From the IMG/VR virus record IMGVR_UViG_3300049215_000771, positions 248,001 to 312,000 of that record: a stretch of DNA of 64,000 nucleotides. The stretch is one strand, 5' to 3'. Under the pieces are notes generated by a model, which did no database searches, was not told where the DNA came from, and saw only the letters and a program-made list of their open reading frames with translations. The position numbers and the translations under genes were made by a program. Below, one piece after another: positions 1 to 23,400 of the stretch. Within the stretch, counting starts at the first letter, position 1, and each line of letters opens with the position of its first letter.

Positions 1-123
1 GACGATCTGAAGGATATACCACCGACCCTCGATTTCCTTCAGGTCAGTGATACCCTTCGTCACGGGCTTGTTGCTGGAGCAGCCAACCAGGGCGAACAAG
101 ATGATGGGAAGTAACTTTCTCAC
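1..123 (-). CDS. Putative lipoprotein, N-terminal part (runs off window start)
   Basis: GTG start overlaps the lysS TGA (GTGA); translates MRKLLPIILFALVGCSSNK..., a basic N-terminus, hydrophobic core and LVGC lipobox. Confidence 0.6.
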   Translation of the reverse strand, partial: MRKLLPIILFALVGCSSNKPVTKGITDLKEIEGRWYILQIV

Positions 124-1673
124 TTTGGCCTCTGATGAGGGAAGGTGATGACATCCCTGATGGCGTCCGTCTCGGCGTAGAGCATGGCGAGGCGGTCGAT
201 GCCAATGCCCAACCCTCCTGCGGGCGGCATCCCGACAATCAAGGCGTCAAGGAAGTCGTAGTCGATCCTTGGATCGTGTTGTCCCGGCTGGAGGCCCAAC
301 TGCTTCTCGAAGTTGGCCTGTTGCACGTCGGGGTTGTTGAGTTCAGTGTAAGCGTTGGCGATCTCCATACCGTTGACGAACAACTCCCAGCGGTCACAAA
401 TCCAGCCCTGCCACTGTTCGTCGTCACGAGGCTTCGCCAGTGGACAAAGGACGGATGGGTAGCCGAACACGAAGGTTGGCTCGGTCAACTGCGGCTGGAT
501 GATCTTGTCGAACACAGCCTCCAGACGATCAACCAGCGGCGTCAACAGGGGCAGACCGGACTTGTGCGCCAGTTCTGCGTCCAGGTCGTGGTGCCACTGA
601 ATGACGTACCTTGGGTCGCCCTGCATCAAACTAGGGCTGTTTGGATCGTACTGCCATTCCGGGGCAAGGACGTGTTCCAACAAGGTGATGTTGCAATACT
701 CCTGAAAAAGATCGCCGTAGGTCGTCGTCCTGGCATTGGCGATGTTGTTTAGGCCGAGAGCGCCGGCGATCTGGCGAGTGATGTAGGCCATCGACTCGAC
801 ATCACCGTAGGCTTCGTACAATTCGAGCATCGTAAACTCAGGATTGTGGGTCCGATCCACGCCCTCGTTCCTGAAGTTCTTGCCGATCTCGTAAATCTTC
901 TCCATACCGCCAACGAGCAACTTCTTCAGGTACAACTCCGGGGCAATGCGAAGGTACAAGTTGGCGTTGTAGGCGTTGTGATGGGTTTGGAACGGACGAG
1001 CAGCGGCCCCACCTGCAATGGGTTGTAGGATTGGGGTTTCTACTTCCGTGAAGCCGTGCTTGTTGAGACACTGCCTGATCTTCCAGACCATCTCGCTCCG
1101 CTTCTGGAGAGTTTTCACCGCCCCTTCCCGGTAGATCAGTTCCAGGTGTCGGTTGCGGGAAAAGACTTCAGGATCGGTAATTCCGTGGAACTTGTCGGGA
1201 GGCGTAGCCAGGCTTTTGCAAAGCATGGTGATCTCGTTAATGCGAAGGCTGATCTCGCCGGTCCTGGTGGCCGTGAGGTAGCCTTGAACGCCAACGATGT
1301 CGCCCGGCAAGAGATTCTGGACGATGTACCAGGGCATCGGGTAATCGGTGCCATTGATGCTGCAAGAACTTACGCCGTCCCACAGGTCGCCCTTGGAAGC
1401 CCAAATCTGAATGGTTTCCGTGGAGTCCCGGAGATGGAAAAATACCAGCTTGCCGAAGTCATTCTTGGACATGACCCGGCCAGCAGCCTTGAATGTGACT
1501 TCCTTGTTGTCCTTGTGCGTCTCGAATTGCCGGCGAATGGTGTCGATGGGCGTGATGCCCTCGAACTTCTGGCCGTAGGGGTCCAGATCGCCGTGCATGA
1601 TGCCGGTCGAGAGTTGTGACAGGATTTCCCGCCTGCGGAGGCGGTCTTGGTAGAGTTGATCTGCGGTGTGCAT
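120..1673 (-). CDS. lysS: Class II lysyl-tRNA synthetase (phage auxiliary gene)
   Basis: OB-fold N-domain (AGRVMSK..FGKLVFFHL), motif 1 GFTEVETPIL, motif 2 FRNEGVDRTHNPEFT, ELFVNGMEIANAYTELN, motif 3 GGLGIGIDRL. Confidence 0.95.
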   Translation of the reverse strand: MHTADQLYQDRLRRREILSQLSTGIMHGDLDPYGQKFEGITPIDTIRRQFETHKDNKEVTFKAAGRVMSKNDFGKLVFFHLRDSTETIQIWASKGDLWDGVSSCSINGTDYPMPWYIVQNLLPGDIVGVQGYLTATRTGEISLRINEITMLCKSLATPPDKFHGITDPEVFSRNRHLELIYREGAVKTLQKRSEMVWKIRQCLNKHGFTEVETPILQPIAGGAAARPFQTHHNAYNANLYLRIAPELYLKKLLVGGMEKIYEIGKNFRNEGVDRTHNPEFTMLELYEAYGDVESMAYITRQIAGALGLNNIANARTTTYGDLFQEYCNITLLEHVLAPEWQYDPNSPSLMQGDPRYVIQWHHDLDAELAHKSGLPLLTPLVDRLEAVFDKIIQPQLTEPTFVFGYPSVLCPLAKPRDDEQWQGWICDRWELFVNGMEIANAYTELNNPDVQQANFEKQLGLQPGQHDPRIDYDFLDALIVGMPPAGGLGIGIDRLAMLYAETDAIRDVITFPHQRPK

Positions 1674-1676
1674 TGA

Positions 1677-1738
1677 TTGATCCTTTACAAACAGCCTTGG
1701 AGATGATACCCCGTTTCCGGCTGTTTGTAAAGGATCAA
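1677..1738. repeat. Perfect 20-bp inverted repeat with 22-bp spacer upstream of lysS
   Basis: ttgatcctttacaaacagcc (1677-1696) and ggctgtttgtaaaggatcaa (1719-1738). Confidence 0.95.
1703..1731 (-). promoter_or_regulatory. Sigma70-type promoter for lysS
   Basis: Minus strand TTTACA-17 bp-TATCAT; the same hexamers recur at 13902-13929. Confidence 0.7.
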
Positions 1739-1744
1739 CGGGGA

Positions 1745-2347
1745 TTACTCGAACGTGTATGTCACGCCAACGTCGTACTTGAGTTCAGGGATGCCGATGT
1801 GGGTGCAAAGGTTATGTTTTTTCGCCTCCTTCGCCGTCAGATACCACTCGGCGTGGCCCTTGTCATGGATGATCTCGGTGAAATAGTTGTCGGGTTTGCC
1901 AACATTCTTCGAGATGATGGAGAAGATCAATTTATGCAATCTTTCCGTCTCCTTGGTGTCGGCTTTAACTTCTTCGACCTTTCCCCAGGAGGCGCTGGAA
2001 ACATCATGAAGCATCAGGGTGGCGTGTTTAGCCATGTAGCGTTGTTGGCCCATTGCGAACAACATGGCCCCGCAGGACATACCCTTTCCTTCAAGTACAG
2101 TAACAACAGGAAGGCTGGCCGACTGGATTTGGGCGATCATGTCGAGAAGGGAGTAGACCTGTCCGCCGTAGGAGTCGATGACGACGGGAATGACGGGTTG
2201 ATGGGTCTGGTGGGCCTTCTCCATTTCTTCGGTGAAGGCTTTGGCCCCATCTTGATCGAACTTGGTGACACGAACGATGACGGGTTGTGGCAGGAGTTCT
2301 TCGATCTTACCACGAATGCGAGGATCAACAGTAAGCGTGCGCCGCAT
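1745..2347 (-). CDS. clpP: ClpP-like serine protease
   Basis: IDSYGG, GMSCG (Ser), LMLHD (His), EWYLTAKEA matching the ClpP D-x-F-L-S-A-x-E-A segment. Confidence 0.85.
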   Translation of the reverse strand: MRRTLTVDPRIRGKIEELLPQPVIVRVTKFDQDGAKAFTEEMEKAHQTHQPVIPVVIDSYGGQVYSLLDMIAQIQSASLPVVTVLEGKGMSCGAMLFAMGQQRYMAKHATLMLHDVSSASWGKVEEVKADTKETERLHKLIFSIISKNVGKPDNYFTEIIHDKGHAEWYLTAKEAKKHNLCTHIGIPELKYDVGVTYTFE

Positions 2348-2579
2348 GGGATGCTCCGATTATTTCTTGTTCGACAATCATTCGGTCGATACAGTCACGG
2401 ACCATATCGGCCAAGGCCGTGTAGTAGAAGAAACTTTTCTCCGTTCCACATTTGTCACGATAGTTGATTATACGCTTCAGTTCAATACGAGCCGAGCGAA
2501 TATCTTCGCATATTTTGGTGTGGGTCCGATATTGGACAGTGAGAATACCATGCTCGTAGCTTACCCTAGTTTTCTTCAT
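2325..2579 (-). CDS. Hypothetical protein
   Basis: 84-aa ORF overlapping the clpP start, with a GTATATA motif just upstream. Confidence 0.55.
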   Translation of the reverse strand: MKKTRVSYEHGILTVQYRTHTKICEDIRSARIELKRIINYRDKCGTEKSFFYYTALADMVRDCIDRMIVEQEIIGASHAAHAYC

Positions 2580-2584
2580 GACAA

Positions 2585-2592
2585 CTATATAC
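2585..2592. promoter_or_regulatory. Putative bidirectional late-promoter motif (C/G)TAnATA
   Basis: CTATATA (+) and GTATATA (-) overlap in the 17-bp gap between divergent ATGs 2579 and 2597. Confidence 0.5.
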
Positions 2593-2596
2593 CTTC

Positions 2597-3199
2597 ATGT
2601 TAGACGGCTTCCGACAATACTTTGAGAGTTTGGCCCACTACACGCCTCGTGAGAACGGGCTTGCTGAACTTGCTCGGCTGGAGAAAGGTCACTACTTGAT
2701 CGTCCAGCCAGCAGACATCGAGACTGCCCATCAATACCTTAATGGGGCAGATGGACTACGGCACATATCGAAGGATATGGTTGTGACGGCTCAGGACATT
2801 GACTTCATGTCCCGAACCACCAAGGAAGCGATAGTTATCATGCCCATCCCGAAACGATGGTTCCGACGACCGCAGCTTGAGCAGAAGGGTGTAACAGGTG
2901 TGATTGGCGAGTTGTTGCCCCTGGGGGATGGCTGGCACTTGCCGGCCAACTATGTGTGGGGCTACTTCTCCAAATGGAACGAGGACCAGGAGAAGATGGT
3001 AGAACCGGGCCAGTTCTATCGCAATCAGAACTACCACGGGCACGACGGCTTGTACGAACTTTGGAAGCGGCAGCATCCCCAGCAGGAGAGGCCACAGACG
3101 CTAGACCGCCCTACGCCGAGAGTAGTTGCACCGTATAACCCGACCATCAATCGGTCATTCCACGGTTACAACACATTCGACTTCGATTCTTCACAATAA
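2597..3199 (+). CDS. Hypothetical protein, possible head-internal protein
   Basis: 200-aa ORF; N-terminus MLDGFRQYFES resembles a T4 capsid-targeting leader. Confidence 0.6.
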   Translation: MLDGFRQYFESLAHYTPRENGLAELARLEKGHYLIVQPADIETAHQYLNGADGLRHISKDMVVTAQDIDFMSRTTKEAIVIMPIPKRWFRRPQLEQKGVTGVIGELLPLGDGWHLPANYVWGYFSKWNEDQEKMVEPGQFYRNQNYHGHDGLYELWKRQHPQQERPQTLDRPTPRVVAPYNPTINRSFHGYNTFDFDSSQ

Positions 3200-3813
3200 C
3201 ATACCTTGCCGCAGTAGACAAGTCGTCTCGCATCAATAAGCGTGATGCCGCCACCTGGCATACAGTCACAGTCCGTGACTCGATGTCCGATGGCTTGTTC
3301 TGTGAAATTCAAAATGAAATCAGAATGGGAAATGAAAACAGCTTTGGCTGGTGAGCGGGCCAGCACTTCATGGACACGCTGAAGAAACTCCTTCGGCGTT
3401 TCTTTGCCCATGCGACCCAGGTGCGGGTCTACAGAAAACTTCAGCCCTGTTACTTCCTCAATGATCCTGGCTGAGTGCCGGCATCGGACGTAAGGGCTGG
3501 TGAAGGCTTCAAAATCCGCCAGATCAAACTCGTGGGCCAGGAACTCGGCGGTCCTATATACCTGGCGCACTCCAACAGGTGTGAGGTTTGCCGGCAGCCT
3601 TTGCCCTGTTGCCTCCCCGTGTCGGATCAGAAAAATCTGCTTGAGATAGAAGTCGTATTCTTCCGTGAAAAACCTACCCGTTTCCGGGTCGAAGAATCCG
3701 CTTTCGATTGCACCATCTTGTTCAGCACAAGAAAGTTTCGAGAACGCATCTCCGTGGTTGCAGCCTGTAACTACCCTTCCGTTGGAGTACAAGGCGGCGA
3801 TATAACTCGACAT
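3166..3813 (-). CDS. Histidine phosphatase (phosphoglycerate-mutase-like) family protein
   Basis: LIRHG, SPYVRCRHSA and distal ISH motifs; about 55-aa extra N-terminal segment; GGAGG RBS. Confidence 0.85.
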   Translation of the reverse strand: MSSYIAALYSNGRVVTGCNHGDAFSKLSCAEQDGAIESGFFDPETGRFFTEEYDFYLKQIFLIRHGEATGQRLPANLTPVGVRQVYRTAEFLAHEFDLADFEAFTSPYVRCRHSARIIEEVTGLKFSVDPHLGRMGKETPKEFLQRVHEVLARSPAKAVFISHSDFILNFTEQAIGHRVTDCDCMPGGGITLIDARRLVYCGKVCYCEESKSNVL

Positions 3814-3834
3814 CGGCCCCTCCTATGATGAGGG

Positions 3835-3841
3835 TATTTAG
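3835..3841 (-). promoter_or_regulatory. Putative late-promoter motif CTAAATA
   Basis: About 22 nt upstream of the 3813 start; close to T4 TATAAATA. Confidence 0.45.
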
Positions 3842-4050
3842 TCGCCCATCTCGCATGTTTCTTGTTCTTCTTCTTGCTTCGCATCCAAAGCAGCCAAACC
3901 CGAACTAACGGCGGCTGAGATCAAGAAGGAAAACACGCCGGCTCCCAAAAAATACCCCCAAATATCCTTGTTATTCAGGGCTAACCAAAACCCTGCAAAC
4001 AACAAGAACCCGGTCAACGAGAACAAACCAACAGAAACAAGAATCTTCAT
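3838..4050 (-). CDS. Small two-TM membrane protein
   Basis: Two hydrophobic stretches, acidic C-tail, GAGGAGGG RBS. Confidence 0.6.
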   Translation of the reverse strand: MKILVSVGLFSLTGFLLFAGFWLALNNKDIWGYFLGAGVFSFLISAAVSSGLAALDAKQEEEQETCEMGD

Positions 4051-4077
4051 ATTCCCTCCTCAGTGGGATTCTCCATT

Positions 4078-4941
4078 CTAGGCAGCTTCTTTACGGGCGT
4101 CGAGACATATTTTTGCTAAACCAGCAACATATTGAGCAGAAGTGGTTCCAAGTTGGGTCGGCAACTTAGCAAGGGCATCGAGTGGGTCGCCTCCCAGCGA
4201 TAACATTGTCGGCGGCGAATACGCAAACAAAGACTTCGAGAAGTAGGGGAAAGCGCCACGACCACCATAGTTGATGAAATTGTTGTTCACTTGATGGTCG
4301 GAGAGAGACATATCGAACGTGTATTGTCCTTCCAGGGCCGCACGTCCTACCAGTTCGGATATACCAATCGACAGCGCCACCCTATCGGTGTGTCGCCAGA
4401 TTTCCTTGCCAGCCATGACTTGCTCGTATGCCAGCATCTCAGTGAGATAGATGGTTCGGTCAAAAAACTCGACGGGCAGGTGGTCGAAATACACGGTGTT
4501 GCCGAGAGCCACCCAATCCCCTGATAGATGCTTGCCAAGGCTAGGGATATTTTCCTCAGCAAGTTCCTTCGTGAAGAAAGGATCGACCTGGAAGACAATG
4601 TGTGGTACATCTTTCCTGGGGATAGTGACGGGCCTGTTGAGAACGGAATCCGGTTCCAACATTACGAAAGGTTGTTTGACAGCTTCTCCTCGCAGTAGAT
4701 TGGCTATTGAGTACAACCCAGCGAGGCGGTCATAGCCACGCACTTCTCCCATGTTGTTGCTACCAAGGGTGCGTGGGTGCGAGAACAGATTGCGGCAGAA
4801 TTCAATTTTGGGAGCCAGTGATGTGAACGACAGCCCTACGGCTAGATTTTCCTCTAGCTTGTGTTGCTTGAAACTTTCGATCAGCAACTCAATCTGCCAC
4901 TGGTAGTAGGGCGTGTGTTCAATGTTGACGAAGTAATCCAT
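4078..4941 (-). CDS. GT-A fold protein resembling plant hydroxyproline O-arabinosyltransferase / peptidyl-serine galactosyltransferase (GT95/GT96-like)
   Basis: Collinear motifs YYQWQIELLIESFK, GYDRL, FVMLEPDSVLNRPV, LGN, FINY, FSK match remembered HPAT motifs YNTWQ, GYVVL, ILMxEPDHIIVKP, IGN, IIHY, FDK; start moved to MDYFVN. Confidence 0.55.
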   Translation of the reverse strand: MDYFVNIEHTPYYQWQIELLIESFKQHKLEENLAVGLSFTSLAPKIEFCRNLFSHPRTLGSNNMGEVRGYDRLAGLYSIANLLRGEAVKQPFVMLEPDSVLNRPVTIPRKDVPHIVFQVDPFFTKELAEENIPSLGKHLSGDWVALGNTVYFDHLPVEFFDRTIYLTEMLAYEQVMAGKEIWRHTDRVALSIGISELVGRAALEGQYTFDMSLSDHQVNNNFINYGGRGAFPYFSKSLFAYSPPTMLSLGGDPLDALAKLPTQLGTTSAQYVAGLAKICLDARKEAA

Positions 4942-4954
4942 GAACCTATAGGAG

Positions 4955-5326
4955 TTACTTCGGTCGATACTTGGAACATTTTTTATCCGTGACGATTGGC
5001 AGGAAGCATTGTTCATAGATGCGGTACACTTCGCTGTACGCTACACCCCATGATGCGTCATGCGACCGTTCTTCAAATTCGTCACAGGTCAAGGCATCAT
5101 GCAAGTGACTCCATGCCCTTGCGTGCGCCCACTCGTGGAGAAGTGTTTCAATGGCCGATGTTTCAGGTAGCTCTCTGTTGATGCGAATACAAAACTTATT
5201 CTCATTCAACGAACAGTCGCCGTCCCTGTGACACGTCATTTTTACTCGCCGCACCTTGATCGGATAGGCAGGCGAGCATTTTCTCTTCAACACGAGAACC
5301 AACTTCTTGTAGGATTCATATGCCAT
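4955..5326 (-). CDS. HEXXH zinc metallopeptidase-like protein (SprT/ImmA-like)
   Basis: IRIN...ETLLHEWAHA and distal H (RSHDASW); start MAYESY with GGAGGGG RBS. Confidence 0.7.
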   Translation of the reverse strand: MAYESYKKLVLVLKRKCSPAYPIKVRRVKMTCHRDGDCSLNENKFCIRINRELPETSAIETLLHEWAHARAWSHLHDALTCDEFEERSHDASWGVAYSEVYRIYEQCFLPIVTDKKCSKYRPK

Positions 5327-5337
5327 ATCCCCTCCAG

Positions 5338-5374
5338 GCAAACAAAAAACCCACGAGGAAATCCTCGTGGGTTT
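5338..5374 (-). terminator. Rho-independent terminator after the cREC gene
   Basis: 12-bp stem AAACCCACGAGG/CCTCGTGGGTTT, 4-nt loop, followed by a U-tract on the minus strand. Confidence 0.8.
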
Positions 5375-5380
5375 ATATAC
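5374..5380 (-). promoter_or_regulatory. Putative late-promoter motif GTATATA abutting the terminator 5' arm
   Basis: A transcript started here would begin inside the hairpin arm and could read into the HEXXH and GT genes. Confidence 0.4.
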
Positions 5381-5399
5381 TGCGTCAGAAACCAACATT

Positions 5400-5783
5400 T
5401 CATCGACGGATTTCTTCCAAAATACTGTCGATGCGGGCGGGAAGTTGGGTAAATGGCACCTGAATCACGTTGACGCCGCCCTGTTTGAGATACGAAACCA
5501 TGTTGCTGGCCCCGGCTGGGTTACAGCTATGGACCACAACAAGGTCAACGATGATCTCGTTATCGGCGATTAGTTTGGCAACTTCCATACCCGTGTCGCC
5601 ACGGTCGGAATTTACCATTTCTTCGCCGCCCAGGTCATGATCGAGAAACACCACATCGTACTTCTTCTTGAGAAGAAGATCGAAGGCTTCCGCCACGGTG
5701 TACGCCTCGTCATGCAACAGGATCGGCTTCATCTTCTGATGCCGATACTTGTTGTCGTCGAGGAACAAGATTCTAAATGCCAT
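5400..5783 (-). CDS. Cyclic-phosphate processing receiver domain (cREC_REC-like)
   Basis: ILFLDD, FLDHDLG, TG and VHSCNPAG motifs; no effector domain. Confidence 0.8.
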   Translation of the reverse strand: MAFRILFLDDNKYRHQKMKPILLHDEAYTVAEAFDLLLKKKYDVVFLDHDLGGEEMVNSDRGDTGMEVAKLIADNEIIVDLVVVHSCNPAGASNMVSYLKQGGVNVIQVPFTQLPARIDSILEEIRR

Positions 5784-6940
5784 TACTCCCCTTTCCTGGA
5801 AATCCGTTTCCGAAGACTCTCGTAGATGAAAGCCGCCCGCTCATCGACGGTATCACCGTCGTTGTTCCAAAGAGAGTTGATCGTTGCGCCGAGGCGTGTG
5901 CTGCCGCAGAAGTGGGCCAGACGCTCGGCGCACTGTTTTGCAGGTGGCAGCTTGCCAAAAACCACTCGATCATAGATGTAGAAGGTGAAAAACCCCGTCT
6001 GCTTCATGATCTTGCGCAGAACTTTGACGTTCACCTGGGCTGCGGCTTGCTGGGCGATCTGATTCCTGAGTTCAGAGTGGAAAACCAGGTAATCCTCGAT
6101 GGCGAGAGCAATCTCCTGGAGAGTCTCGTCGCTGACCTTGAACAGCGATTCCGCTTCTTCTTCGTGATTCTTGTAAGGCAACTTCGCCAATTTCCCGGCG
6201 TAGCGGCGACAGTTGTAGATCGTGTAGTGGGACTTCTGCAAATCTCGGCCCGCCATCTTGCCAGACTTGATGACCTTCTCTGTTCGGGCGTACACAAGTG
6301 CGGCGAGCGGTTGCAGAAAGCCACTCTTGCCGCCGATCAGGTTGCGGGCAGGGGCGCTAATCATGTTGGCGAGCCGCCCATTGAGTTTTGGGTCATACGG
6401 GTCGCAAGAGATGATATGTCCCAAAACCATGTCCGGGTTCTTCAGGAACCCGTCCTTGCTTTGGGGACGACAGTTTTCGAGGTTGCAATACAGTTCCGTG
6501 ATCTTGTCGGCGTCAAAAACCCGGCAAGAAACGATCTCTTTCTTGACCGAGTTCCACATTTCGTCCGAGGCCATCCAGTAAAGATAGAGGAGGAAACAGC
6601 AGCGATGGTGGTGCGAGGCCAGGGTCATGGCGTCCGTGTTTTCGGACTCGCCGATTGGGAATTCCCCAAGGGCTTCGATGCACAACCCTTTCTCGAACCA
6701 GCGAAGAATTTGCCCCATGTCGATGGGCTGACCACCACGATTGCGACCGTAGCCGCCGCAAAGCTGCTGAAGCAGCATGTGAACCACGACCTCGACCGTC
6801 AGAAGAGCAACAACCGAGTTGCTGTAGTTACCTCGCTTCATGGATTTGAAGTCGGGCATCGGCAGGAACTTCTTCGGCAATTCCCGCTTGCGGTTCTTGA
6901 ATTTCTCAGGGTTTGTGAAATCGGCGAGATACATTCCCAT
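5783..6940 (-). CDS. Hypothetical protein
   Basis: 385-aa ORF coupled to the downstream gene (TAATG); no recognised motif. Confidence 0.7.
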   Translation of the reverse strand: MGMYLADFTNPEKFKNRKRELPKKFLPMPDFKSMKRGNYSNSVVALLTVEVVVHMLLQQLCGGYGRNRGGQPIDMGQILRWFEKGLCIEALGEFPIGESENTDAMTLASHHHRCCFLLYLYWMASDEMWNSVKKEIVSCRVFDADKITELYCNLENCRPQSKDGFLKNPDMVLGHIISCDPYDPKLNGRLANMISAPARNLIGGKSGFLQPLAALVYARTEKVIKSGKMAGRDLQKSHYTIYNCRRYAGKLAKLPYKNHEEEAESLFKVSDETLQEIALAIEDYLVFHSELRNQIAQQAAAQVNVKVLRKIMKQTGFFTFYIYDRVVFGKLPPAKQCAERLAHFCGSTRLGATINSLWNNDGDTVDERAAFIYESLRKRISRKGE

Positions 6941-7775: not shown

Positions 7776-8330
7776 TTACTTGCCGGCGTATCGAACCGTG
7801 ATGTCCATGCCTTCGTCGGTCGGGGTGATCTGGACCTGGAAACCATCGGGTCGGCGGGCGCTCATTTCGTTCATGGCGATAGCCCTAGCCTGTTTGATGG
7901 CCGAGTTCGGCTCGATATGACCGTGGACGTGGAAAACCCATGTGTTGGCCAGTGGGCGTTCTAGTGTGGCTTTGACGGTAGCATAACCACTACGGCCACC
8001 CTTCATCATGATGGTTTTACCTATTTTTTCCTTGACAGGTTCGGCTGGTGCGTCGGCGACATCGCTTTTGGGCATCTCTCCGACTGGCACACGAGGAGAT
8101 GTCCCATATGGCGTGTGAGTCGTGGCTGGATCGGCTGAGGCGACCATAGCGGGCCGGTCGGCGGCAGGAGAAGCAGGACGATTCATCAGTTTGTTCGCAC
8201 CCCAGGCGCTTGCGGCAAGTCCACCAAGGAGGCCCATTGTTTGTAGAAACTTGTTGTCCTTCAACGCCTCTACCAATTCAACATCCCTAACTTCCAACCA
8301 CTCGTTGAATGTTGGAAGTTTATTCTTCAT
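7776..8330 (-). CDS. Hypothetical protein with capsid-targeting-like leader and hydrophobic segment
   Basis: Start moved to MKNKLPTFNEWLEVRD; the longer ORF merely overlaps the upstream low-complexity tail. Confidence 0.6.
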   Translation of the reverse strand: MKNKLPTFNEWLEVRDVELVEALKDNKFLQTMGLLGGLAASAWGANKLMNRPASPAADRPAMVASADPATTHTPYGTSPRVPVGEMPKSDVADAPAEPVKEKIGKTIMMKGGRSGYATVKATLERPLANTWVFHVHGHIEPNSAIKQARAIAMNEMSARRPDGFQVQITPTDEGMDITVRYAGK

Positions 8331-12780: not shown

Positions 12781-13256
12781 CAATGTTCATGGAATTCGTT
12801 GACCGCCAACAACGGGAATCGAGAAGGCATCTCAAGATCATGGAGAAACTTCTCAAAAGCCAAGGTATGCAGGTGAAGTCCCATCTTGAAGACGAAGACC
12901 CCTACATTTTCGTCAAAACAACTACACCAAGGCTGAGTTTTGACGGCATCAGAATCTACGAGATAGGCGAAGCCCTTGCCTATCGGGTCGTGAAAGAAGA
13001 AAAAACTGAACCTTACGGCAAGGCGTACTCATTGAATCTTGAACAAATGTTCAACGATTTCATGAGTGAAAACAAGATGGAATCGGAGCAAGCGGGCAAG
13101 AAGGTAATCGAGAGTGTTTTGAACGAGTTGAAGAAATTCTTCGACAAAAGTGCAACAGCCGAGAAGGAATTGAAAGCTGGCGACTTGGATGGGACTGGCA
13201 TCATCCTGAGAACAGGTGGTACGGATTACTCCAGCCTGGTCTTCAACAAGCCATAA
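12771..13256 (+). CDS. Hypothetical protein
   Basis: AGGAGGAG RBS before ATG 12771; followed by a terminator. Confidence 0.7.
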   Translation: MPVTMFMEFVDRQQRESRRHLKIMEKLLKSQGMQVKSHLEDEDPYIFVKTTTPRLSFDGIRIYEIGEALAYRVVKEEKTEPYGKAYSLNLEQMFNDFMSENKMESEQAGKKVIESVLNELKKFFDKSATAEKELKAGDLDGTGIILRTGGTDYSSLVFNKP

Positions 13257-13261
13257 AGCTG

Positions 13262-13325
13262 ACCGGGGCTGAGACTAGCTGAAGGCATTTTTGTGCCTCT
13301 TAATGCTGTCTCAGCCCCGGTTTTT
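13262..13325 (+). terminator. Terminator-like long stem-loop
   Basis: 14-bp stem accggggctgagac/gtctcagccccggt around a 32-nt structured loop, followed by TTTT. Confidence 0.7.
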
Positions 13326-14498: not shown

Positions 14499-17400
14499 AT
14501 GGCACAAGTTCTTGACAGTTTTGGGCGTGCTGCTGAAGACGCAACAATGAGTCTGAAGCAGCTTCGTGAGTTAATCAAGTCGTTGGCTCAGGGCAAAGTT
14601 GGCCCGCCAACGTCTCCTGGACAGGCTGCGCAAGATGCTGGCGTAAAGATGCCGATGCCGACCCCGGATGTCAAGCCCGATCCAAACAGTGTCGATCCCA
14701 AAGTCATTGAAGAAATGCGTGACATTTTGAAGGAGTACAAGAAGGATTGGGACAAGGAAACAGATGATGCCAAGAAGCACGTCGAGGACACTGTTGATCT
14801 CCTGAAAAACATCGACCAGGCCAAAGAAGCAAAAAGCAAGCAACCCAAGGGTGTGGGGAAAGACAAACCGAGCAAAGAAGATGTCTCGATGGAGCATTCT
14901 CTTGCTCAGTTGGCGCATCATGGACTGAAGAAAGGTTCGATCCAGACGGCAGATTGGAAGATGTTCTCGCACGTTGTCAAGGCGGACGGCATCACACAGT
15001 CAAAGCTGGAACAAATCGTGCAGCTACTTGACAAGAGCGCCAAAGTTTCCAAGGGTATCAAGCCCGGCACATTCAAGGTTGAAACCGACTTGAACCTGTC
15101 TACAGTGAAAAAGCAAGTCGAGAAGGAAGCCCCCGGTGCTTACAAGGCTGGCAAGACAAAACGAGACGACAGCTACTCGGCTCACCCAGCGCACAAAGCC
15201 CTGGCCGAGATGCGACTTGAACCATTGGTGCGTGAACTTTCCTTCATGAAGGAAGTCCTCACGAGTATAACTGGCGTGCTGGATAAGATGCAGGATGCCT
15301 TCTTTGGCTTCAAGGTCGGCGAGACGTTGTTCAAGGGTATTGTCAAAGAAGAAACCAAGTTCATCCGTGATGCCCGTGCTGCCGCCTACGAGACAGCCGG
15401 AATCACTAAGGAAACTCGTGCCCTGCAACGAGCCTACGAAGACATCGGCACAACTGCCGCCATCACGGGCTTCAATCGTACCGAGTACCAGAAAGCCTAC
15501 CTGAAGACCTTGAAGCGTGGCATCAAGGATTTGGGCACGGTCAACAAGATCACCCAGGCTCAACTCAACACCGAAAGCCAGATCGGTGTCGAGGCCGGTA
15601 CTTTGAGCGATGAGTTCGCCAACTGGCACACGCAGATGAGGTTCAACGCTGGCCAGGTTGCCGAAATGGGACGTGGAGTTCGTGATGTTGCCAAGTTCAC
15701 TGGCATCACTGGCGAGAAGCTGGCACAAGCCGTCAAGAGCAGTGAGCAGTTCATGACGACGATGCGCAACGCCGCCACATTGACAGCTTCCGCAGCGAAG
15801 AACATCATCGAGATTCAGGCTGTTTCTCAGAAGATGGGTACTGCTGACACAATGGCCCCGCTCATGAAGGCCATGACCAGTACCAACAATTTGATCCGAG
15901 AGGCATCCAACCAGACTCGTGCCTTGTTGATTAACGCCGCCGCCAAGGTTGGTCGTGTTCGTGAATTGATGATGGGCACCATCCTCCAGTCCAAGGCCGG
16001 TATCAAGGACATGGCGAAGGGTTTGGAGGCTAACCTCCGCATGTTCGGCGTCAATAGCATCGAAGAAATCGACAACCTGAGCGACGAGGCCAAGCAGCGG
16101 CTTAACCTCCAGTTGAAGGCTGCTTTTGGCATTGAACTTGGAGAGATGCGTCAAACCATCGAAACCCTGAAGGAAGCTGGCAAGGGTTTGGGCGACCGCA
16201 TCGCCGACATCAACAAGAAACTACAACAAAACGTCACCATCGAGGAGCGTAAGGCTTTGGAAGAACAGAAGCGGGCTATGACCGCTTCTGCCAGCTTGTC
16301 GGTTTTGAACGCCCTGGACGAAGCAGCCAAGGGTGCCCAGGACATGAACCAGGCTCTCGCCAAGTTTGGCACTCGCCGCAAGCAGTTCCAGGATGACCTG
16401 AACGCAATGGGTATCACCGCTACGGACAACGCTGATGTTGCCCGTCAAGCCATCGGTACGGCCCTCGCCAACATCAACCAGTCTTTGAAGGCTGGCGGTA
16501 AGCAGGAACTCAAGATCGACTCGTCGCAGATTGAGAAGGCACTGCAAGACCCGGTTGCGTTCCGTGAGCTACAAGCACAACTGACCAAGGCTGAACAACA
16601 AGCAGCAACGGCTGCCAAGGCCCAGCTTGATCCGGTGTCGGAGATCAGACAGAAAGTCAACGAGATCAACGACAACATCAGGAATATGAGCCAGAACGTC
16701 ATCAGCAAGCTGATGAATAGTATGTTGGGCAAGTTGGCCTTCATCGCCATTGCCATCATGTCTGTCGTGTCAACGGTTGGATTGTTCCTGATCGGGTTGT
16801 ATATGCTCAAGAGGGAACTTGGCACCATGTTGCAGTTCGTCGGGCCGTCCCTGATGAAGATATTCGATCTATTCAAGTCAAAGTTGTTCGGAGGCGGTCC
16901 AACGACCCCGGCTCCTAAAGGACCGACCACACCTGATGCCGCACTCGATATTGTGGATAAGAGGAAGAAGGAAGGAAAAGAAAAAACAACTGAAGCAGAG
17001 AAAAAAACCAAAACTCCTTGCGATCCATGTCCACTGCTCACAGAAATAGTCAAATTGTTGAGTGCTATCAAGGATTGTGTTTGCCAGGGTAAGGAACCGA
17101 CCATCAAAACTGCTGTTGTTGATTCCAAGGGCAAGATCATTCCTGAAGAAAAACGGGCCGAGGCTGCTGCTGGGATGAACAAGTACCAGGGCATGACACA
17201 AGAGCAAAAAGCGACAGAAAAACTGAAGGAACGCAAGGGAGTCACGACCCCAACTGCGGCTCTGCCGACTCCGCAGACGCTACCGAAAGCTACAGAAACA
17301 ACGGCTGCAATGCCCAAGAAGGCGGAAGCTGCTGCTGGCGCTGCGGCCACGGCGGTCAAAGAAAAAACAACTTGTGACACCTGCCCAATCCTGAAAGAAA

Positions 17401-20400
17401 TCGCCGGCAGCATCAAGGCTTTGGACCCAACCATGAAGGAAATGGCTGGCAAAGTTGCTGCATTGGAACCAGTCGTCAAAGCTATTGATCCTTCTTTGAA
17501 GGCAATTGCTTCGGCTTTGGCCCCGCTTGCCGACATCAAAACACTTCTCGATGCCATCAAGCAATGTGTGTGTCAGCCAAAAACCGAACAAGCTACCCAG
17601 GCTGCACAACCAGAAGCCAAGAAAACAACAACCACGCCAGCGGCAACAGCACAGGCAACGGCTACGGCTGCTGCGACTGCTCCTGCGAAGAAGATTGAGG
17701 GGTTGGAAGACCCAGCGGTTGTCAAGGCCAAGCTGAAACAGATCAACAACGACAGCAAGCTCACGACTGTCGAGAAGAAGATGCAGACGAAGGAACTCGT
17801 CATGCAGCGCAAAGAAATCATCATGCAGAAGAAGGCGATTCCTTTGCAAAAGCGTGAGATTGCAACAGAAAAAGCACGGGAGGGTTTGGTCAAGGGCCAG
17901 AAGAAGGAAATGGCTAAGGCCGAGCCAGCAGAACCACCACCAACTGCACCTTCTGGTGGGTGGGACTTGGAATCCCTGAAGAAGTCTGGACCGGAGATGG
18001 CTAAGACAGCCGCCGCCATTTTGATTATGGCCGTGGGTGTTGTAGCCCTTGGTGCGGCTATTGTCTTCCTGTCGCACAAGGTCATCAAAGCCTTCAACCT
18101 TGACATGAAAACTGTGCTGGAGACTGCGGGCATAGTTGCAGCTTTGGCAGGAGCCGGCGCAGCCATCGCCGTCGCAGCTTATGGTGTCATCGAGGCATTG
18201 GAAAGCAAAGAAGTCCAAGACTTTGTTGGCAAGGCGAAGAAGGGTTGGAAAGACCTGGCTAAAACCGCCGCTGCCATCCTCATCATCGGACCAGCCGTTG
18301 TGCTACTTGGTGCTGCCGTTGTTGGAGCTACTGCCGCCATCCTGAAGGCTTTCAACCTGAATCTTACCACCGTAATTGAAACGGCGGCGGTTGTAACTGC
18401 TGTTGCTGGCGCTGCTACTGCTATTATTGTGGCCGCAAGTAAGGCATTGGAGTGCATGGAAGAAATGAACTCCCTGCCGGGTGCGAAGAAACTGATGCAG
18501 AATCCTGTCAAGATGGCATGGACGATGGCGAAGGCTGGCCTGGCGATGCTTATCCTAGCCCCGGCCATTGTATTCCTGGGTGCTGCTGTCATCAAGATGG
18601 CTCAGTGGATATTGGGAATCTTCAACCTCGATGCTAGGACGGCGATGGAAGTTGGGGCCACAGTCGCCGCCGTCATCCTGTCTGCCGGTCTAATTGCTGG
18701 TGCCATCATTGGTGCCATGTTCGGGTTGTATGGCCTGGGCTTGCTGGTTGACTGGATGTACTCCGATCCGACTTTCATTCCGCATATCACCCAGGGCGCA
18801 ATCGCCTTGTTGATTCTGGCCCCGCTCGTTTTGCTACTGGCAGCCGCCGTCACCAAGTTCGCTCAGTGGATTCTTGGAGCCTTCAAACTATCTGCCAAGG
18901 ACGCCCTTGACACCGGCATGACTGTAGCCGCCGTCATAGTCGGGGCCGGTTTGATTGCCGGTGCCATCATTGGTGCGATGTACGGATTGTACGGCCTGGG
19001 CTTGCTGGCGAAATACGCCATGAAGTACGCCTGGACGATAGCGATGGGCGCTTTGGCTTTGCTCATCTTGACGCCAGTGATGATTAAATTGGCCTTGGTA
19101 ATCATCGACATGGCGAACTCCCTGATCGACCTGTCGCCGAAGGATGTTGAAAACATTGTCAACAAGGTCACAGCTTTGTTTGAAGGAGCCGGCAAGATAG
19201 CCTTGGCTGTATTGTTGGCATCCGGTGCCCTGGCCTTGCTCGGCATGGCTGTAGCATCTGGCTATATTCTTTATGCCGCCCTCATGATGGGTCTTGGCGC
19301 TTTGGCATTGCTGGTTTTGACTCCTGCCATGATAAAGATGGCGCTCGCCATCCTCAACATGGGCAAGGAGCTAACCGAAAGTATCTCCCTAGAAGAAGCC
19401 AAGAAGATCGCCGAAGGTGTGAAGACAATCTTCACTGCCGCTGGTGATGTTGCAGGTGCCGTGGTAGACATGAGCGGTTATCTGTTGAAGATGGGTTTCC
19501 TGTCCTTCTTGAATTTGTTTGGATTTGTTACAGGTTTGTTGAACAAGGGCGCAGCGTTCTTCTTCGAGATTGCGAAGCCAATCGGCAACTTCGTGATGGG
19601 GTTGATGGCAATGGGCAAGGCCATGACTCAAACGATGCCGATGGATCAGGCAAAGAAAACAGCCGAGGGCGTCAAAACGATCTTCGAGTCTGCTGGTGTC
19701 ATTTCCGACAATGTTCAGTCCTCCGTGTGGTCGTTGATTAAGATGGGATTCCTTAGCATCCTCAACAGGGGTGGTTGGATTACCAGCTTGATGGATGCCG
19801 GCGCAGGCTTCTTCATGGATTTGGCTAAACCAGTTGCCAAGTTCACCTTGTCGATTTTGGCGTTGGGCAAGGCTATGTCGCAAGCTATCGACCCGGCCAA
19901 GGCACGAGAAATTGCCAAGGGCGTGAAGGACATTTTCGATGCAGCGGCAGCCGTCAACCAGTCGCTAACCAGCCAGATGAGTACCCTCATCAAGCTGGGA
20001 ATGCTTTCCTGGTTCTCGTTCCTGATTCCTGACCTGGACAAAGCAACCGAATTCTTCATGTCGCTGGCGAAGCCGGCTATGAAGTTCACCCTCATTCTGA
20101 TTGCCCTGGGCCGTGCCCTTGTTGCTGCTGCTGGTGGTCCGAAGAAGATTAAGCCGTTGATTGAAGGAATCAAGGGTATTGGCGAGATCATTGAGGCAGT
20201 CAGCAAGATCATGGACATTCTCATCAAGAAGATCGTGCCGATGACTCAGGCGAAATGGTTCGGCTTGTTCGGCTCGTCTCAGCTTGAAGATTTGGCTGAC
20301 GCTGTGCCGAAGTTCCGGGCGTCGTTCGAGTCAATCACGACCTTCATCAGAGATGGCATCATTATGCCGATCAGGAGAACTTTCAGGAACACGGCGCAGA

Positions 20401-23400
20401 TTCAGAAAACCCTCGCCATCGCCAAGGGTCTGGCCGACGCTATGCAGGCGGCAGCCAAGATCATGGATACAGTCATCAAGTCCGTCCTGCCGTTGACTCG
20501 TCCGTGGTTCCTGGGTTGGTGGGGTAACAGTCGCCTCGACGATCTGGCAGATGCGATTCCGAAGTTCCAGAAGTCGTTCGAGAAGATTGTTGATTTCATC
20601 AAGAACGCAATCATTGAACCGATCAGGAGTGCTTTCCGAAACACCAAGAAGATCGCAGCGGTCATTGGTGTTGCCAAGGCGATTGCGCAAGCAATGCAAG
20701 CCGTTCTGCCGATGGTCAACAGCGTCCAGAAAGCGGTTTCGGACTTGACGCAGGCCAGGGGCTTCTTCAGCTTCATTGGCATTGGCGACTCCAAGATGGA
20801 ACAGCTTGAGAAAGCAATACCAGGATTCCAGGGAACCTTCCAGAAGATTGTCGATTTCGTCAAGAATGGCATCATCGAACCAATCCGCCGTGCATTCCCG
20901 CACCTGAAGAAAGTGCAGCCGATCATTGCCATCGCCAAGGGCATTGGCGATACGGTGCTTTCTATCGTCAACATGGTTGACACAGTTGCGAACAAGTTAG
21001 TGCCAATGACAGAACGTGGTGGTATTTGGGCCAGCATGTTCGGTGACGCCCGCTCGCAAATGGAGAAGATCGACGCCTTGCTCACAGGAAGTTTCCAGAA
21101 AATCTTCTCCAGCATGGTGAACTTCTTGAAGAACGGCCTTATTGGACCAATCACCAGTGCGTTCCCGAACCTGCAACAAGTCAACACGATTCTTCCAGTT
21201 GTCAACGGAGTCGGCAATGCCGTCACTGCCATTGCAAACATGGTGGACGCCCTAATCAACAAGTTGATGCCGCTGGCTGAGAAGCCTGGTTTTTGGGGAA
21301 GGATATTCGGCGAAACAAAATCCAAGTTCGAGCAGTTGGAAGAAGTCATCCCGACCATCGGGGCGATGTGGAGCAGTATTGTTTACTTCGTCCGTGACGG
21401 ATTGATTGGTCCAGTTGTGCGTGCTTTCCCATGCCTGAAAGAAGCCGAATCGCAAATCAAAACTGTTGAATTGGTTGGCAAGTCCATAAAAACAGTTGCC
21501 GATGTCATGGAAACAGTAAAGGAGATACAGCAAAACATCGACCCGCTGGCCGGTATAAGGTCTATCTTTGGCGACATCTTCCCCAAGGTGAACCCGCTGG
21601 AGAAAGCGATCCCGATGATCCAGGCTACCTTCATCGCCATCACCAAGTTCGTGAAGGAAGGTATTATCGAGCCAGTTCAGTCAATGGATGCCAATGGCTT
21701 GAAACAGTCCGTCACAAAACTGGAACAAATGAACAAGGCGTTCCAACTCATGCAAGACCTGGTGGATAGTCTCCAGGGCATGATGGGCATGACAGAAGGG
21801 GGCACCGTAAGCAAAACCACCGGCCCTTGGTACTGGCGGACCACGGTTGTCGAGAAGGTTGATCCAATGACGGACAAGCTGCAAGCCGCCATCAAGCCGA
21901 TTTCCGATACCTTCAAGAAGATCACTCAGTTTGTGCAAGATGGCATCGTGGTCCCTGTTTCCAAACTTGATGCTGGCGACCTGAAGAAAACCGTCAAGAT
22001 TTTGATGTGGATGGCATTGGCGCTAGAGAAAGTTCCAGAAGTAATGGAGAACCTGGGCGACGTTCTGAAGATGTTGAGTCCTGATGGCAACGCACTGCAA
22101 AGCCACCTTGCAACTCAAATGATTAACGAAATGCAGGGTCGCTGGAAGGGTTGGTACAAGTGGGTCTTCACGGGTATGGCAACATTCATCAAGGACGGCA
22201 TCATGGACCCGATCTTGAAGAATCTTACCGATGTGAAGAAAGTCAAAACCGTCGCCAAGATTATCATGGCAGCGGCTATAATGCTCGACAAACTTCCAGA
22301 CATGATGGAGAACTTGGGAGATGCGCTCAGGCTGTTGAGTCCTGATGGTAACGCACTACAAAGCCACCTTGCAACTCAAATGATTAACGAGATGCAGGGT
22401 CGCTGGAAGGGTTGGTACAAGTGGGTCTTCACGGGCATGGCAACATTCATCAGGGAAGGCATCATAGACCCAATCTCCAAGGAACTCACGGACGTTAAGA
22501 AGGTCAAAACCGTCGCCAAGATCGTTGTCGCCGCCGCAATGATGCTTGAAAAACTTCCAACGATGATGGAAGGACTTGGCAACGCTCTCAGGCTGTTGAG
22601 TCCTGATGGCAACGTACTGCAAAGCGCTCTCGCAACACAGATCATTAACGAGATGCAGGGTCGATGGAAGGGCTGGTACAAGTGGGTCTTCACTGGCATG
22701 GCAGCATTCATCAGGGAAGGCATCATGGACCCAATCTCGAAGAACCTTACCGAAGTGGATAAAGTCCAAACCGTAGCTAAGATTCTGGTCGCTGCCGCCA
22801 CCATGATGACCAAGCTCCCGCCTGTCATGCAGAACCTTGGTGATGCACTCAGGCTGTTGAGTCCTGATGGTAATGTACTCCAGACCGCCCTCGTGTCGCA
22901 GATTCAAGGAGAAATGAACGGACGCTGGAAAGGCTGGTACGCCAAGACCTTCACCGACATCGCCAAGTTCATCAGGGAAGGCATCGTCAACCCGGTGTTG
23001 GGAGAACTCTACGACGCCAAGACAATCATGACCGCCGCCAAGATTCTGGTCGCTGCGGCGCAGATATTGACCGTTCTGCCAGTAGTCATGCAGAAACTCG
23101 GCGATGCACTCAGGTTGTTGAGTCCTGACGGAAACGTACTGCAAAGCGCTTTGACAACGCAAATGCAGAACGAAATGGCCGGACGTTGGAAGGGCTGGTA
23201 CGAGAAGACCTTCAGATCAATCGCCATTTTCATGCGGGAAGGTATCGTCAACCCAATACTGCAAGAACTGCCGAATGTCAAGGACATTGTGATGGCAGCC
23301 CGCTTGATGCGTGCGATGTCGGTTATCCTCACGTCACTACCGAGGGTTATCACTGCCTTGGCAAGTGCTATGGGCCTGATGTCCAACCCGGATTCGCTGC

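What the first reader, a model, noticed from the sequence alone, without database searches (positions are those of the whole stretch)
1677..1738. lysS promoter and RBS locked inside a perfect 20-bp inverted repeat
Seen: on the minus strand the 5' arm contains the -35 (TTTACA), the 22-bp spacer contains the -10 (TATCAT), and the 3' arm contains the SD-like AAGGA and ends 3 nt before the ATG. Established: T4 gene e is silenced on read-through mRNA by a hairpin and translated only from an internal promoter. Inference: read-through RNA from clpP folds a 20-bp hairpin that blocks lysS translation, while RNA from the internal promoter lacks the 5' arm and is translated. Alternatively, inversion of the spacer would flip the -10 and switch lysS off, or the arms are a dimeric operator.
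Basis: partly seen in the sequence, partly recalled or inferred. Interest (0 to 1): 0.62.

Follow-up and report, generated by a model that had tools for sequence, protein, structure and literature searches.

The report
Phage lysS promoter inside RBS-hiding hairpin
In a 533-kb phage from moss, the lysyl-tRNA synthetase gene's own conserved promoter sits inside a perfect 20-bp hairpin, so RNA reading in from the neighbouring late gene should hide the ribosome-binding site while RNA from that promoter leaves it open, which is a new example of a trick known from phage T4.

Summary
Arms 1677-1696 and 1719-1738 are 20/20 complementary with a 22-nt spacer. On the minus strand the 5' arm holds TTTACA, the spacer holds TATCAT 17 nt later, and the 3' arm holds AAGGA and ends 3 nt before the lysS ATG.

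The promoter is real by two tests:
- The same -35/17/-10 block lies before lysS in all three syntenic relatives.
- The motif occurs 22 times in the 533-kb genome against about 0 expected, often 5-7 nt from an ATG. That places the lysS start site at about 1696, the first base of the 3' arm.

The upstream ClpP-like gene is led by a second promoter class, GTATATAG (25 copies against 1.5 expected). This class precedes the tail sheath and a T4 gp55-like late sigma. No terminator is predicted before lysS.

Folding gives the SD an unpaired probability of 0.001 on read-through RNA and about 0.3 on promoter-initiated RNA.

The hairpin is absent from the relatives, so it is young. An independent DNA sample shows the same single spacer orientation.

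The best reading is T4 gene e-type gating with reversed timing. It rests on sequence analysis only: no start site, read-through RNA or translation was measured. It is a new member of a known kind, of moderate interest.

The parts
1719..1738 (-). 5' arm of the inverted repeat (TTGATCCTTTACAAACAGCC). It contains the -35 hexamer.
1697..1718 (-). 22-nt spacer, which forms the loop (GGAAACGGGGTATCATCTCCAA). It contains the -10 hexamer with the GG typical of this promoter class.
1677..1696 (-). 3' arm (GGCTGTTTGTAAAGGATCAA). It forms the 5' UTR of promoter-initiated lysS mRNA and is absent from the three relatives.
1726..1731 (-). -35 hexamer TTTACA
   Evidence: 10 of 12 matches, 17-nt spacer; aligned in all four loci; class census
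1703..1708 (-). -10 hexamer TATCAT, preceded by GG (GGTATCAT)
1694..1698 (-). Predicted transcription start, with the 7th nt after the -10 at G1696, the first base of the 3' arm. This is inferred, not measured.
   Evidence: Six promoters of the same class lie 5-7 nt from an ATG, as for leaderless mRNAs. L005 and L004 lysS lie 6 and 8 nt from the -10.
1681..1685 (-). SD-like AAGGA. AGGA starts at -11 from the ATG.
   Evidence: The genome-wide SD profile peaks at -11 to -8. Unpaired probability is 0.001 on read-through RNA and about 0.3 on promoter-initiated RNA.
120..1673 (-). lysS, a class II lysyl-tRNA synthetase of 517 aa
   Evidence: relatives at 59-68% identity, then Planctomycetota LysS at 42-45%
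1745..2347 (-). ClpP-family protease-like gene (200 aa), probably a late or prohead-type protease. Its stop codon lies 6 nt before the 5' arm.
2325..2579 (-). 84-aa ORF that overlaps the start of the ClpP-like gene. It is the first gene of the upstream transcription unit.
   Evidence: a homologous 82-aa ORF is present in L004
2585..2592 (-). GTATATAG, a late-type (-10-only) promoter-like element, 5 nt before the ATG of the 84-aa ORF. It is the likely source of transcripts that read into lysS.
   Evidence: conserved in L004

Best explanation
The window lies in a 533-kb tailed phage from moss metagenomes.

The proposed mechanism:
1. lysS has its own two-element, sigma-70-type promoter (TTTACA-17-GGTATCAT), inherited from the common ancestor of this phage clade.
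2. In this lineage a 20-nt inverted copy of the -35 region now lies between the -10 and the ATG.
3. Transcripts entering from the upstream late-type unit (GTATATAG promoter, 84-aa ORF, ClpP-like protease, no terminator) carry both arms. They fold a stem of 20-21 bp (about -36 kcal/mol) that buries the SD and ends 2-3 nt before the AUG, so lysS is not translated from them.
4. Transcripts started by the lysS promoter begin at about the first base of the 3' arm. They lack the 5' arm and have a free 23-nt leader with a well-placed SD.

This is the logic of T4 genes e, soc, 49 and I-TevI, probably with reversed timing: the early-type promoter is productive and late read-through is silent.

Shown: the repeat, the promoter motif with its conservation and class, the second promoter class, and the folding difference.
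Inferred: the start site, the existence of read-through, the temporal classes, and any effect on translation.
For: Promoter:
- All three syntenic relatives carry TT(T/A)ACA-17-TAT(C/A/G)AT directly before lysS, while the flanks diverge (alignment).
- TTTACA-N17-TATNAT occurs 22 times in the genome against about 0 expected. The copies are strand-polarised and lie before ORF starts.

Start site:
- Six promoters of this class lie 5-7 nt from an ATG.
- L005 and L004 lysS lie 6 and 8 nt from the -10. The start is therefore about 7 nt after the -10, which is G1696.

Read-through source:
- GTATATAG occurs 25 times against 1.5 expected. One copy lies 5 nt before the 84-aa ORF that leads the ClpP-like gene, and it is conserved in L004.
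- This class precedes the tail sheath, an adaptor-like gene (weak hit) and a 179-aa sigma that matches the PHROG 'late sigma transcription factor'.
- The sigma-70-like class precedes GluRS/GlnRS, PRPP synthetase, RNA ligase and NADAR.
- No terminator-like site is predicted on the minus strand between 2592 and lysS.

Occlusion:
- The SD has an unpaired probability of 0.001 on read-through RNA and 0.27-0.33 on RNA starting at 1694-1698.

Same logic by other means in relatives:
- L003 pairs its -10 region with the AUG (AUG unpaired 0.02 on read-through RNA, 0.87 on its own RNA).
- L005 has a classic terminator plus a leaderless start.
- L004 is nearly leaderless.

Precedent: T4 genes e, soc, 49, I-TevI and Aeh1 mobE (PMC3014915, PMC2988022).
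Against: - The hairpin is absent from all three relatives. It is lineage-specific and probably young, and a perfect repeat may simply not have had time to decay.
- No start site, read-through transcript or translation was measured. The RNA-library contigs lie at 1529-1679 and 1985-2300 and do not cross the hairpin.
- The temporal assignment of the two promoter classes is inferred from gene content.
- Truncated RNAs always look more open, so part of the accessibility contrast is generic.
- A perfect 20-bp RNA duplex is also an RNase III substrate, and cleavage could reverse the outcome.
- One class-1 promoter copy abuts a tRNA in a way that does not fit the assumed start-site spacing.
Confidence: 0.5

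Rival explanations
1. RNase III processing site or 3'-end stabiliser. The long perfect duplex on read-through RNA is cut by the host RNase III, or it blocks 3' exonucleases. This separates the ClpP-like message from lysS. Depending on the cut, it either frees the SD (activation) or destroys the lysS leader.
For: - The stem is 20-21 bp and perfect, about the minimum RNase III substrate (enzyme requirement from my own knowledge of T7 and lambda N-leader processing).
- A second perfect repeat (genome 344849-344913) buries the AAGGAGG and AUG of its downstream gene and has no recognisable promoter inside, so that gene needs some opening mechanism.
- Perfect long repeats outnumber decayed ones 4 to 1, as expected if perfect pairing matters.
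Against: - The phage genome has no RNase III gene (PF14622), and the host enzyme is unknown.
- The conserved internal promoter already explains how lysS is expressed.
- There is no cleavage evidence.
Confidence: 0.17
2. Young, selectively neutral inverted duplication. A template-switch event copied the -35 region in inverted form into the leader. It persists only because it is recent, and its main consequence is a longer 5' UTR with an SD.
For: - The repeat is absent from the three relatives.
- The arms are perfect, and the arm sequence is unique in the genome.
- L004 carries a tandem direct 17-nt duplication of the same -35 region, so local duplication happens at this spot.
- The two DNA samples are identical, so they give no information on selection.
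Against: - The placement is very specific: one arm lies exactly upstream of the predicted start and the other covers exactly the SD.
- Decayed long repeats are scarce genome-wide.
- Relatives reach the same promoter-dependent translation by other means.
- Even if it arose neutrally, the RNA would still fold and block the SD on any read-through transcript.
Confidence: 0.2
3. DNA-level operator. The two 20-bp arms, with centres 42 bp apart, are bound by a dimeric or tetrameric repressor that clamps the lysS promoter.
For: The arms bracket the promoter symmetrically, with centres about four helical turns apart.
Against: - No other copy of the arm exists in 533 kb within 3 mismatches.
- Relatives keep the promoter but not the repeat.
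- 20-bp half-sites 42 bp apart are atypical for operators (my own knowledge).
- No DNA-binding protein was recognised among the neighbouring genes scanned.
Confidence: 0.05
4. Non-canonical transcription terminator for the ClpP-like unit. The hairpin stops or pauses RNA polymerase coming from upstream.
For: - In L005 a classic terminator occupies the equivalent position.
- Six of 24 class-1 promoters have a terminator abutting the -35, against 8% at random sites.
Against: - There is no U-tract after the stem (UCAAUGCAC).
- The loop is 22 nt, whereas the genome's terminators have loops of 3-9 nt.
Confidence: 0.06
5. Invertible switch. Recombination between the arms flips the 22-bp spacer and with it the -10.
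For: Only the geometry of the repeat.
Against: - The source assembly and an independent sample both show one orientation, with no joints.
- 22 bp is far below the length that DNA looping for site-specific inversion allows (my own knowledge).
- Contigs cannot exclude rare variants.
Confidence: 0.01

Closest known systems
T4 gene e (lysozyme) translational gating, also seen for T4 soc, 49, I-TevI/II/III and segB and for Aeh1 mobE (PMC3014915, PMC2988022; McPheeters et al. 1986, PMC311593)
   Same: - The SD and initiation region are sequestered in a stable helix on long transcripts from upstream genes.
- A promoter lies inside the structure, so its transcripts lack the 5' strand and can be translated.
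   Different: - In T4 the internal promoter is a -10-only late promoter, and the silent RNAs are early or middle.
- Here the internal promoter is a two-element sigma-70-type promoter, with the -35 in the 5' arm and the -10 in the loop. The silent RNA probably comes from a late-type promoter, so the timing is reversed.
- The stem is a perfect 20-bp inverted duplication of the promoter's own -35 region.
- The hairpin is not conserved in relatives, whereas the gene e structure is predicted in closely related T4-type phages, though several T4-related phages that have gene e show no such structure (PMC3014915).
- The gated gene is a tRNA synthetase.
RNase III processing hairpins of T7 early mRNA and the lambda N leader (my own knowledge)
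   Same: A long intercistronic duplex lies between co-transcribed phage genes and overlaps a translation initiation region.
   Different: - Those sites usually have internal loops and documented cleavage.
- This stem is perfect, has a 22-nt loop that contains a promoter element, and has no cleavage data.
Terminator-promoter modules of this genome and of L005
   Same: They sit in the same position between an upstream gene and a class-1 promoter and would have the same insulating effect.
   Different: - Terminators end the RNA. They have short loops and U-tracts and lie wholly upstream of the -35.
- This hairpin spans the promoter and acts, if at all, on translation.
Leaderless lysS mRNAs of relatives L004 and L005
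   Same: Translation is tied to the gene's own promoter, because only a 5'-terminal AUG is used efficiently.
   Different: The window has a 23-nt leader with an SD, and promoter dependence would come from the hairpin instead.

Membership tests
T4 gene e-type gating (RBS-sequestering hairpin with an internal promoter) | The SD and/or AUG is held in a stable helix on transcripts that start upstream. | tested here: met
   The stem is 20-21 bp, -35.6 kcal/mol when isolated. SD unpaired probability is 0.001 on read-through RNA, and z = -7.6 against shuffles. This is prediction only.
T4 gene e-type gating (RBS-sequestering hairpin with an internal promoter) | A promoter is placed so that its transcripts lack the 5' strand of the helix. 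| tested here: met
   TTTACA-17-TATCAT is conserved in three relatives and belongs to a class with 22 copies against about 0 expected. The start site inferred from leaderless members falls at 1696, the first base of the 3' arm. The start site was not measured.
T4 gene e-type gating (RBS-sequestering hairpin with an internal promoter) | Transcription from an upstream unit of another temporal class reads into the gene. | tested here: inconclusive
   A late-type GTATATAG lies at 2592-2585, and no terminator-like site is predicted on the minus strand before lysS. No RNA contig bridges 1680-1984.
T4 gene e-type gating (RBS-sequestering hairpin with an internal promoter) | Long and short transcripts are translated differently. 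| not testable with these tools
   This needs reporter fusions or toeprinting.
Intrinsic (rho-independent) terminator | A GC-rich stem with a short loop, followed by a U-tract. | tested here: not met
   The loop is 22 nt and the tail is UCAAUGCAC. The scan does not call the 20-bp hairpin a terminator on the minus strand.
RNase III processing site | An RNA duplex of about two helical turns. | tested here: met
   The perfect stem is 20-21 bp.
RNase III processing site | Cleavage by RNase III. | not testable with these tools
   No phage RNase III gene was found, and the host enzyme is unknown.
Invertible promoter switch (Hin/Gin/Fim type) | Both orientations are present in the population, and the invertible segment is long enough for synapsis. 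| tested here: not met
   Two independent assemblies show a single orientation and no joints, and the segment is only 22 bp. Rare variants are not excluded by contigs.
Sigma-70-type promoter class of this phage (TTTACA-17-GGTATnAT) | Both hexamers, a 17-nt spacer and G(G/T)G before the -10, on the strand of the downstream gene and close to its start. | tested here: met

The most novel reading that the evidence does not exclude
This huge phage uses a hairpin built from its own promoter as a temporal gate of reversed polarity. A translation-apparatus gene (lysS) is translated only while the sigma-70-type promoter fires. It is silenced on late transcripts that are driven by a gp55-like sigma from the neighbouring protease gene. 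Together with the other perfect 20-24-bp intercistronic repeats, at least one of which also buries an RBS, this would point to a recurrent way of creating translational insulators by templated inverted duplication.
Probability: 0.3. Interest if true: 0.55.

Novelty: new member of a known kind. Interest (0 to 1): 0.42.

Why it matters
Huge phages carry tRNA synthetases and tRNAs (PMC7162821), but how these genes are timed is essentially unknown, because the phages are uncultivated.

This site gives a concrete, testable regulatory design for one such gene. The analysis also recovered two promoter classes from sequence alone: a sigma-70-like class with frequent leaderless starts, and a -10-only GTATATAG class linked to a gp55-like late sigma. 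These can be used to annotate the transcription programme of this phage clade.

If the gating is real, the T4 gene e principle extends to an unrelated giant phage with opposite temporal polarity. It would also show that such a gate can arise in one step by inverted duplication of a promoter element.

Tried and rejected
- **Close relatives by DNA or single protein:** the viral-contig scan with LysS alone and blastn against phages found nothing. A scan with the four-protein LysS alignment gave only 33-40% identical LysS on unrelated viral contigs, useless for comparing the junction.
- **Hairpin in relatives:** no inverted repeat of 15 nt or more lies near lysS in L003-L005, so covariation could not be tested.
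- **Known RNA family:** an Rfam E-value scan of 1-6000 found nothing relevant.
- **Repeat family or multi-site operator:** the arm and the spacer are unique in the genome.
- **Shared motif in the other long repeats:** the loops of the other three hold no class-1 or class-2 promoter and no enriched 8-mer.
- **Divergent promoter on the plus strand:** TTTACA-17-TACCCC is not a credible -10 and the scan does not call it.
- **RNA evidence:** the metatranscriptome runs are held only as contigs, at very low depth. Pieces lie at 1429-1579, 1529-1679 and 1985-2300 and none crosses the hairpin. They neither show nor exclude read-through or a start site.
- **Translational coupling from the ClpP-like stop codon:** the stop lies 6 nt before the stem, so a terminating ribosome would open at most 1-2 bp (inference).
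- **tRNA-mimic autoregulation of the thrS type:** no tRNA-Lys anticodon-loop-like sequence is visible in the loop. This was by inspection only.
- **Crude gene caller:** my greedy ORF caller mis-called the ClpP region. I used it only for the SD profile.

Full report
**What is there.** The window is bases 248,001-312,000 of a 532,729-bp virus record with 52.7% GC.
- The record encodes a tail sheath protein, 56 tRNAs, several aminoacyl-tRNA synthetases and two sigma-like proteins. It is therefore a huge tailed phage of the kind described in PMC7162821.
- It was found in moss metagenomes.
- Apart from three phage-clade relatives, its LysS is closest to Planctomycetota LysS at 42-45% identity. This is a hint about the host, not proof.

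**The observation.** The repeat finder returns arms 1677-1696 and 1719-1738, 20 nt, 100% complementary, 22 nt apart. On the minus strand the order is:
- stop codon of the ClpP-family protease-like gene (TAA, 1747-1745), then 6 nt;
- 5' arm 1738-1719, with TTTACA at 1731-1726;
- spacer 1718-1697, with TATCAT at 1708-1703, 17 nt after TTTACA;
- 3' arm 1696-1677, with AAGGA at 1685-1681, then 3 nt;
- ATG of lysS at 1673.

- By my own arithmetic, about 5e-5 perfect 20-bp inverted repeats with a spacer of 100 nt or less are expected in this genome, and four are present.
- The RNA fold is -39.1 kcal/mol over 96 nt, z = -7.6.
- A contig from an independent moss sample (X3, 1019-2134) is identical, so the repeat is not an assembly artefact.

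**The promoter is real.** LysS has three relatives at 59-68% identity on syntenic contigs. The shared gene order is histidine phosphatase, antisense ORF, small ORF, ClpP-like gene, LysS, PrkA-like gene, then a class I synthetase. Directly before each lysS start lies the same block (alignment):

| Locus | Promoter block | Distance from -10 to ATG |
|---|---|---|
| L003 | TTAACA-17-TATAAT (preceded by TGG) | 17 nt |
| L004 | TTTACA-17-TATGAT | 8 nt |
| L005 | TTTACA-17-TATCAT | 6 nt |
| window | TTTACA-17-TATCAT | 29 nt |

- The flanks are otherwise diverged.
- Genome-wide, TTTACA-N17-TATNAT occurs 22 times against about 0 in Markov simulations and is expected 0.01 times per 64 kb.
- The 24 convincing copies share TTTACAA and (T/G)GGTATnAT. 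They lie on the plus strand up to 209 kb and on the minus strand from 213 kb, and they sit before ORF starts.
- Six copies lie only 5-7 nt from an ATG, the signature of leaderless mRNAs. This fixes the start site at about the 7th nt after the -10.
- For lysS that is G1696, the first base of the 3' arm. The start site is inferred, not measured.

**Where read-through would come from.**
- The ClpP-like gene overlaps an 84-aa ORF whose ATG (2579) lies 5 nt after GTATATAG (2592-2585).
- GTATATAG is among the most over-represented 8-mers in the genome, 25 copies against 1.5 expected.
- It usually sits 3-18 nt before a start, often right after the start codon of a divergent gene. It is conserved at the same place in L004.
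- Genes behind it include the tail sheath, an adaptor-like protein (weak hit), a peptidase and a 179-aa protein. That protein has only sigma region 2 and matches the PHROG 'late sigma transcription factor' family, so it is T4 gp55-like.
- Genes behind the sigma-70-like class are GluRS/GlnRS, PRPP synthetase, a T4-type RNA ligase, NADAR and lysS.
- I infer that GTATATAG is the late class and TTTACA-17-TATCAT an early or host-type class. The latter could also be read by the 279-aa phage sigma, which has regions 2 and 4.
- No terminator-like site is predicted on the minus strand between 2592 and lysS. The ClpP-like gene best matches phage head-maturation proteases, which fits a late gene.

**Consequence for the RNA.**
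- On RNA that starts upstream (1760 or 1800), the SD has an unpaired probability of 0.001.
- On RNA that starts at 1694-1698 it is 0.27-0.33.
- AGGA begins at -11, on the genome-wide SD peak at -11 to -8.
- This is the mechanism documented for T4 genes e, soc, 49 and I-TevI and for Aeh1 mobE (PMC3014915, PMC2988022). The difference is that here the productive promoter is the two-element sigma-70 type and the silent transcripts are probably late ones.

**Evolution.**
- The hairpin is absent from the three relatives.
- In the alignment the 5' arm corresponds to the ancestral -35 region, and most of the 3' arm is extra sequence between the -10 and the ATG.
- The simplest origin is an inverted duplication of the -35 region by template switching (inference).
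- L004 has a tandem direct 17-nt duplication of the same -35 region, so this spot is prone to local duplication.
- The relatives seem to reach the same end by other means:
  - L005 has a canonical terminator after the ClpP-like gene plus a leaderless lysS.
  - L004 is nearly leaderless.
  - L003 pairs its -10 region with the AUG (AUG unpaired 0.02 on read-through RNA, 0.87 on its own RNA).
- These contrasts are partly generic, because shorter RNAs always look more open.
- Six of 24 class-1 promoters have an intrinsic terminator abutting the -35, against 8% at random sites. At lysS the hairpin occupies that insulating position.

**Rivals.**
- **RNase III site.** A perfect 20-bp duplex is a plausible substrate. 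A second perfect repeat (genome 344849-344913) buries the AAGGAGG and AUG of its downstream gene with no promoter inside, so some opening mechanism must exist in this system. The phage has no RNase III gene.
- **Neutral young duplication.** This cannot be excluded, because the two DNA samples are identical. Against it, decayed long repeats are rare, 1 against 4 perfect ones.
- **Operator.** This is weakened by the uniqueness of the arm and by its absence from the relatives.
- **Non-canonical terminator.** This is unlikely, since there is no U-tract and the loop is 22 nt.
- **Spacer inversion.** This is rejected as far as contigs allow, with one orientation in two assemblies, and on physical grounds.

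**Limits.**
- All RNA and DNA runs were available only as contigs. The RNA pieces (1429-1579, 1529-1679, 1985-2300) show that this phage's sequence is present in RNA libraries, but they give nothing on starts or read-through.
- Nothing here measures transcription or translation.

**Verdict.** This is a new instance of a known regulatory design in an unusual setting. It is lineage-specific and untested, so its interest is moderate.

Noticed in passing
G000:C1:344849-344913 (L027:750-814): A perfect 22-bp inverted repeat with a 21-nt loop starts 4 nt after the upstream gene's TAA. Its 3' arm holds the AAGGAGG and ATG of a 172-aa ORF. No class-1 or class-2 promoter lies inside, so it is unclear how that ORF is ever translated.
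   Followed up: partly
G000:C1:212872-212939 and G000:C1:198390-198445: Two more perfect long inverted repeats (24 bp with a 20-nt loop, GC-rich; 22 bp with a 12-nt loop). The first lies where the plus-strand and minus-strand arms of class-1 promoters converge, so it may be a bidirectional stop or a terminus. A class-1 promoter at 213108(-) points at it.
   Followed up: partly
window 2585-2592 (-), plus 24 other sites in G000 (window copies near 3561, 52597, 53616 and 58525): GTATATAG is a second, -10-only promoter-like class (25 copies against 1.5 expected). It precedes the tail sheath and a gp55-like 179-aa sigma (genome 413426-413965). This implies a T4-like late transcription system in this huge phage.
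   Followed up: partly
G000:C1:90389-91228: A second phage sigma factor (279 aa) with regions 2 and 4. It could read the two-element class-1 promoters in place of the host sigma.
   Followed up: partly
G000:C1:7961-8064: The TATCAT of a class-1 promoter ends at 7989, and tRNA-Ala(tgc) starts at 7990. A start about 7 nt later would fall inside the tRNA. This is unexplained.
   Followed up: no
G000 whole genome (tRNA clusters at 0.1-122 kb and 472-497 kb): ARAGORN tRNA genes. Three have CUA anticodons and one has UCA (suppressor-like). None is called as Lys despite the phage lysS, though one odd call at 13184-13278 has a 4-nt 'cttg' anticodon. I did not invoke or test any alternative genetic code.
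   Followed up: no
L004:4951-4984 and L004:4315-5004: In relative L004 a polysaccharide deacetylase gene is inserted between the ClpP-like gene and lysS. The lysS promoter lies inside its 3' end, and the -35 region is tandemly duplicated (a 17-nt direct repeat).
   Followed up: partly
window 14499-28160 (+): A single open reading frame of 4,553 aa.
   Followed up: no
window 2597-3199 (+): A 200-aa gene of unknown function lies antisense within the minus-strand gene block. Its start is 17 nt from the divergent 84-aa ORF, and the arrangement is conserved in L003-L005.
   Followed up: no
whole record: The protein database lists the window's LysS on a 673,178-bp contig, longer than the 532,729-bp record that IMG/VR labels a provirus. 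The trimming may reflect host-like genes (synthetases, tRNAs) and not integration.
   Followed up: no
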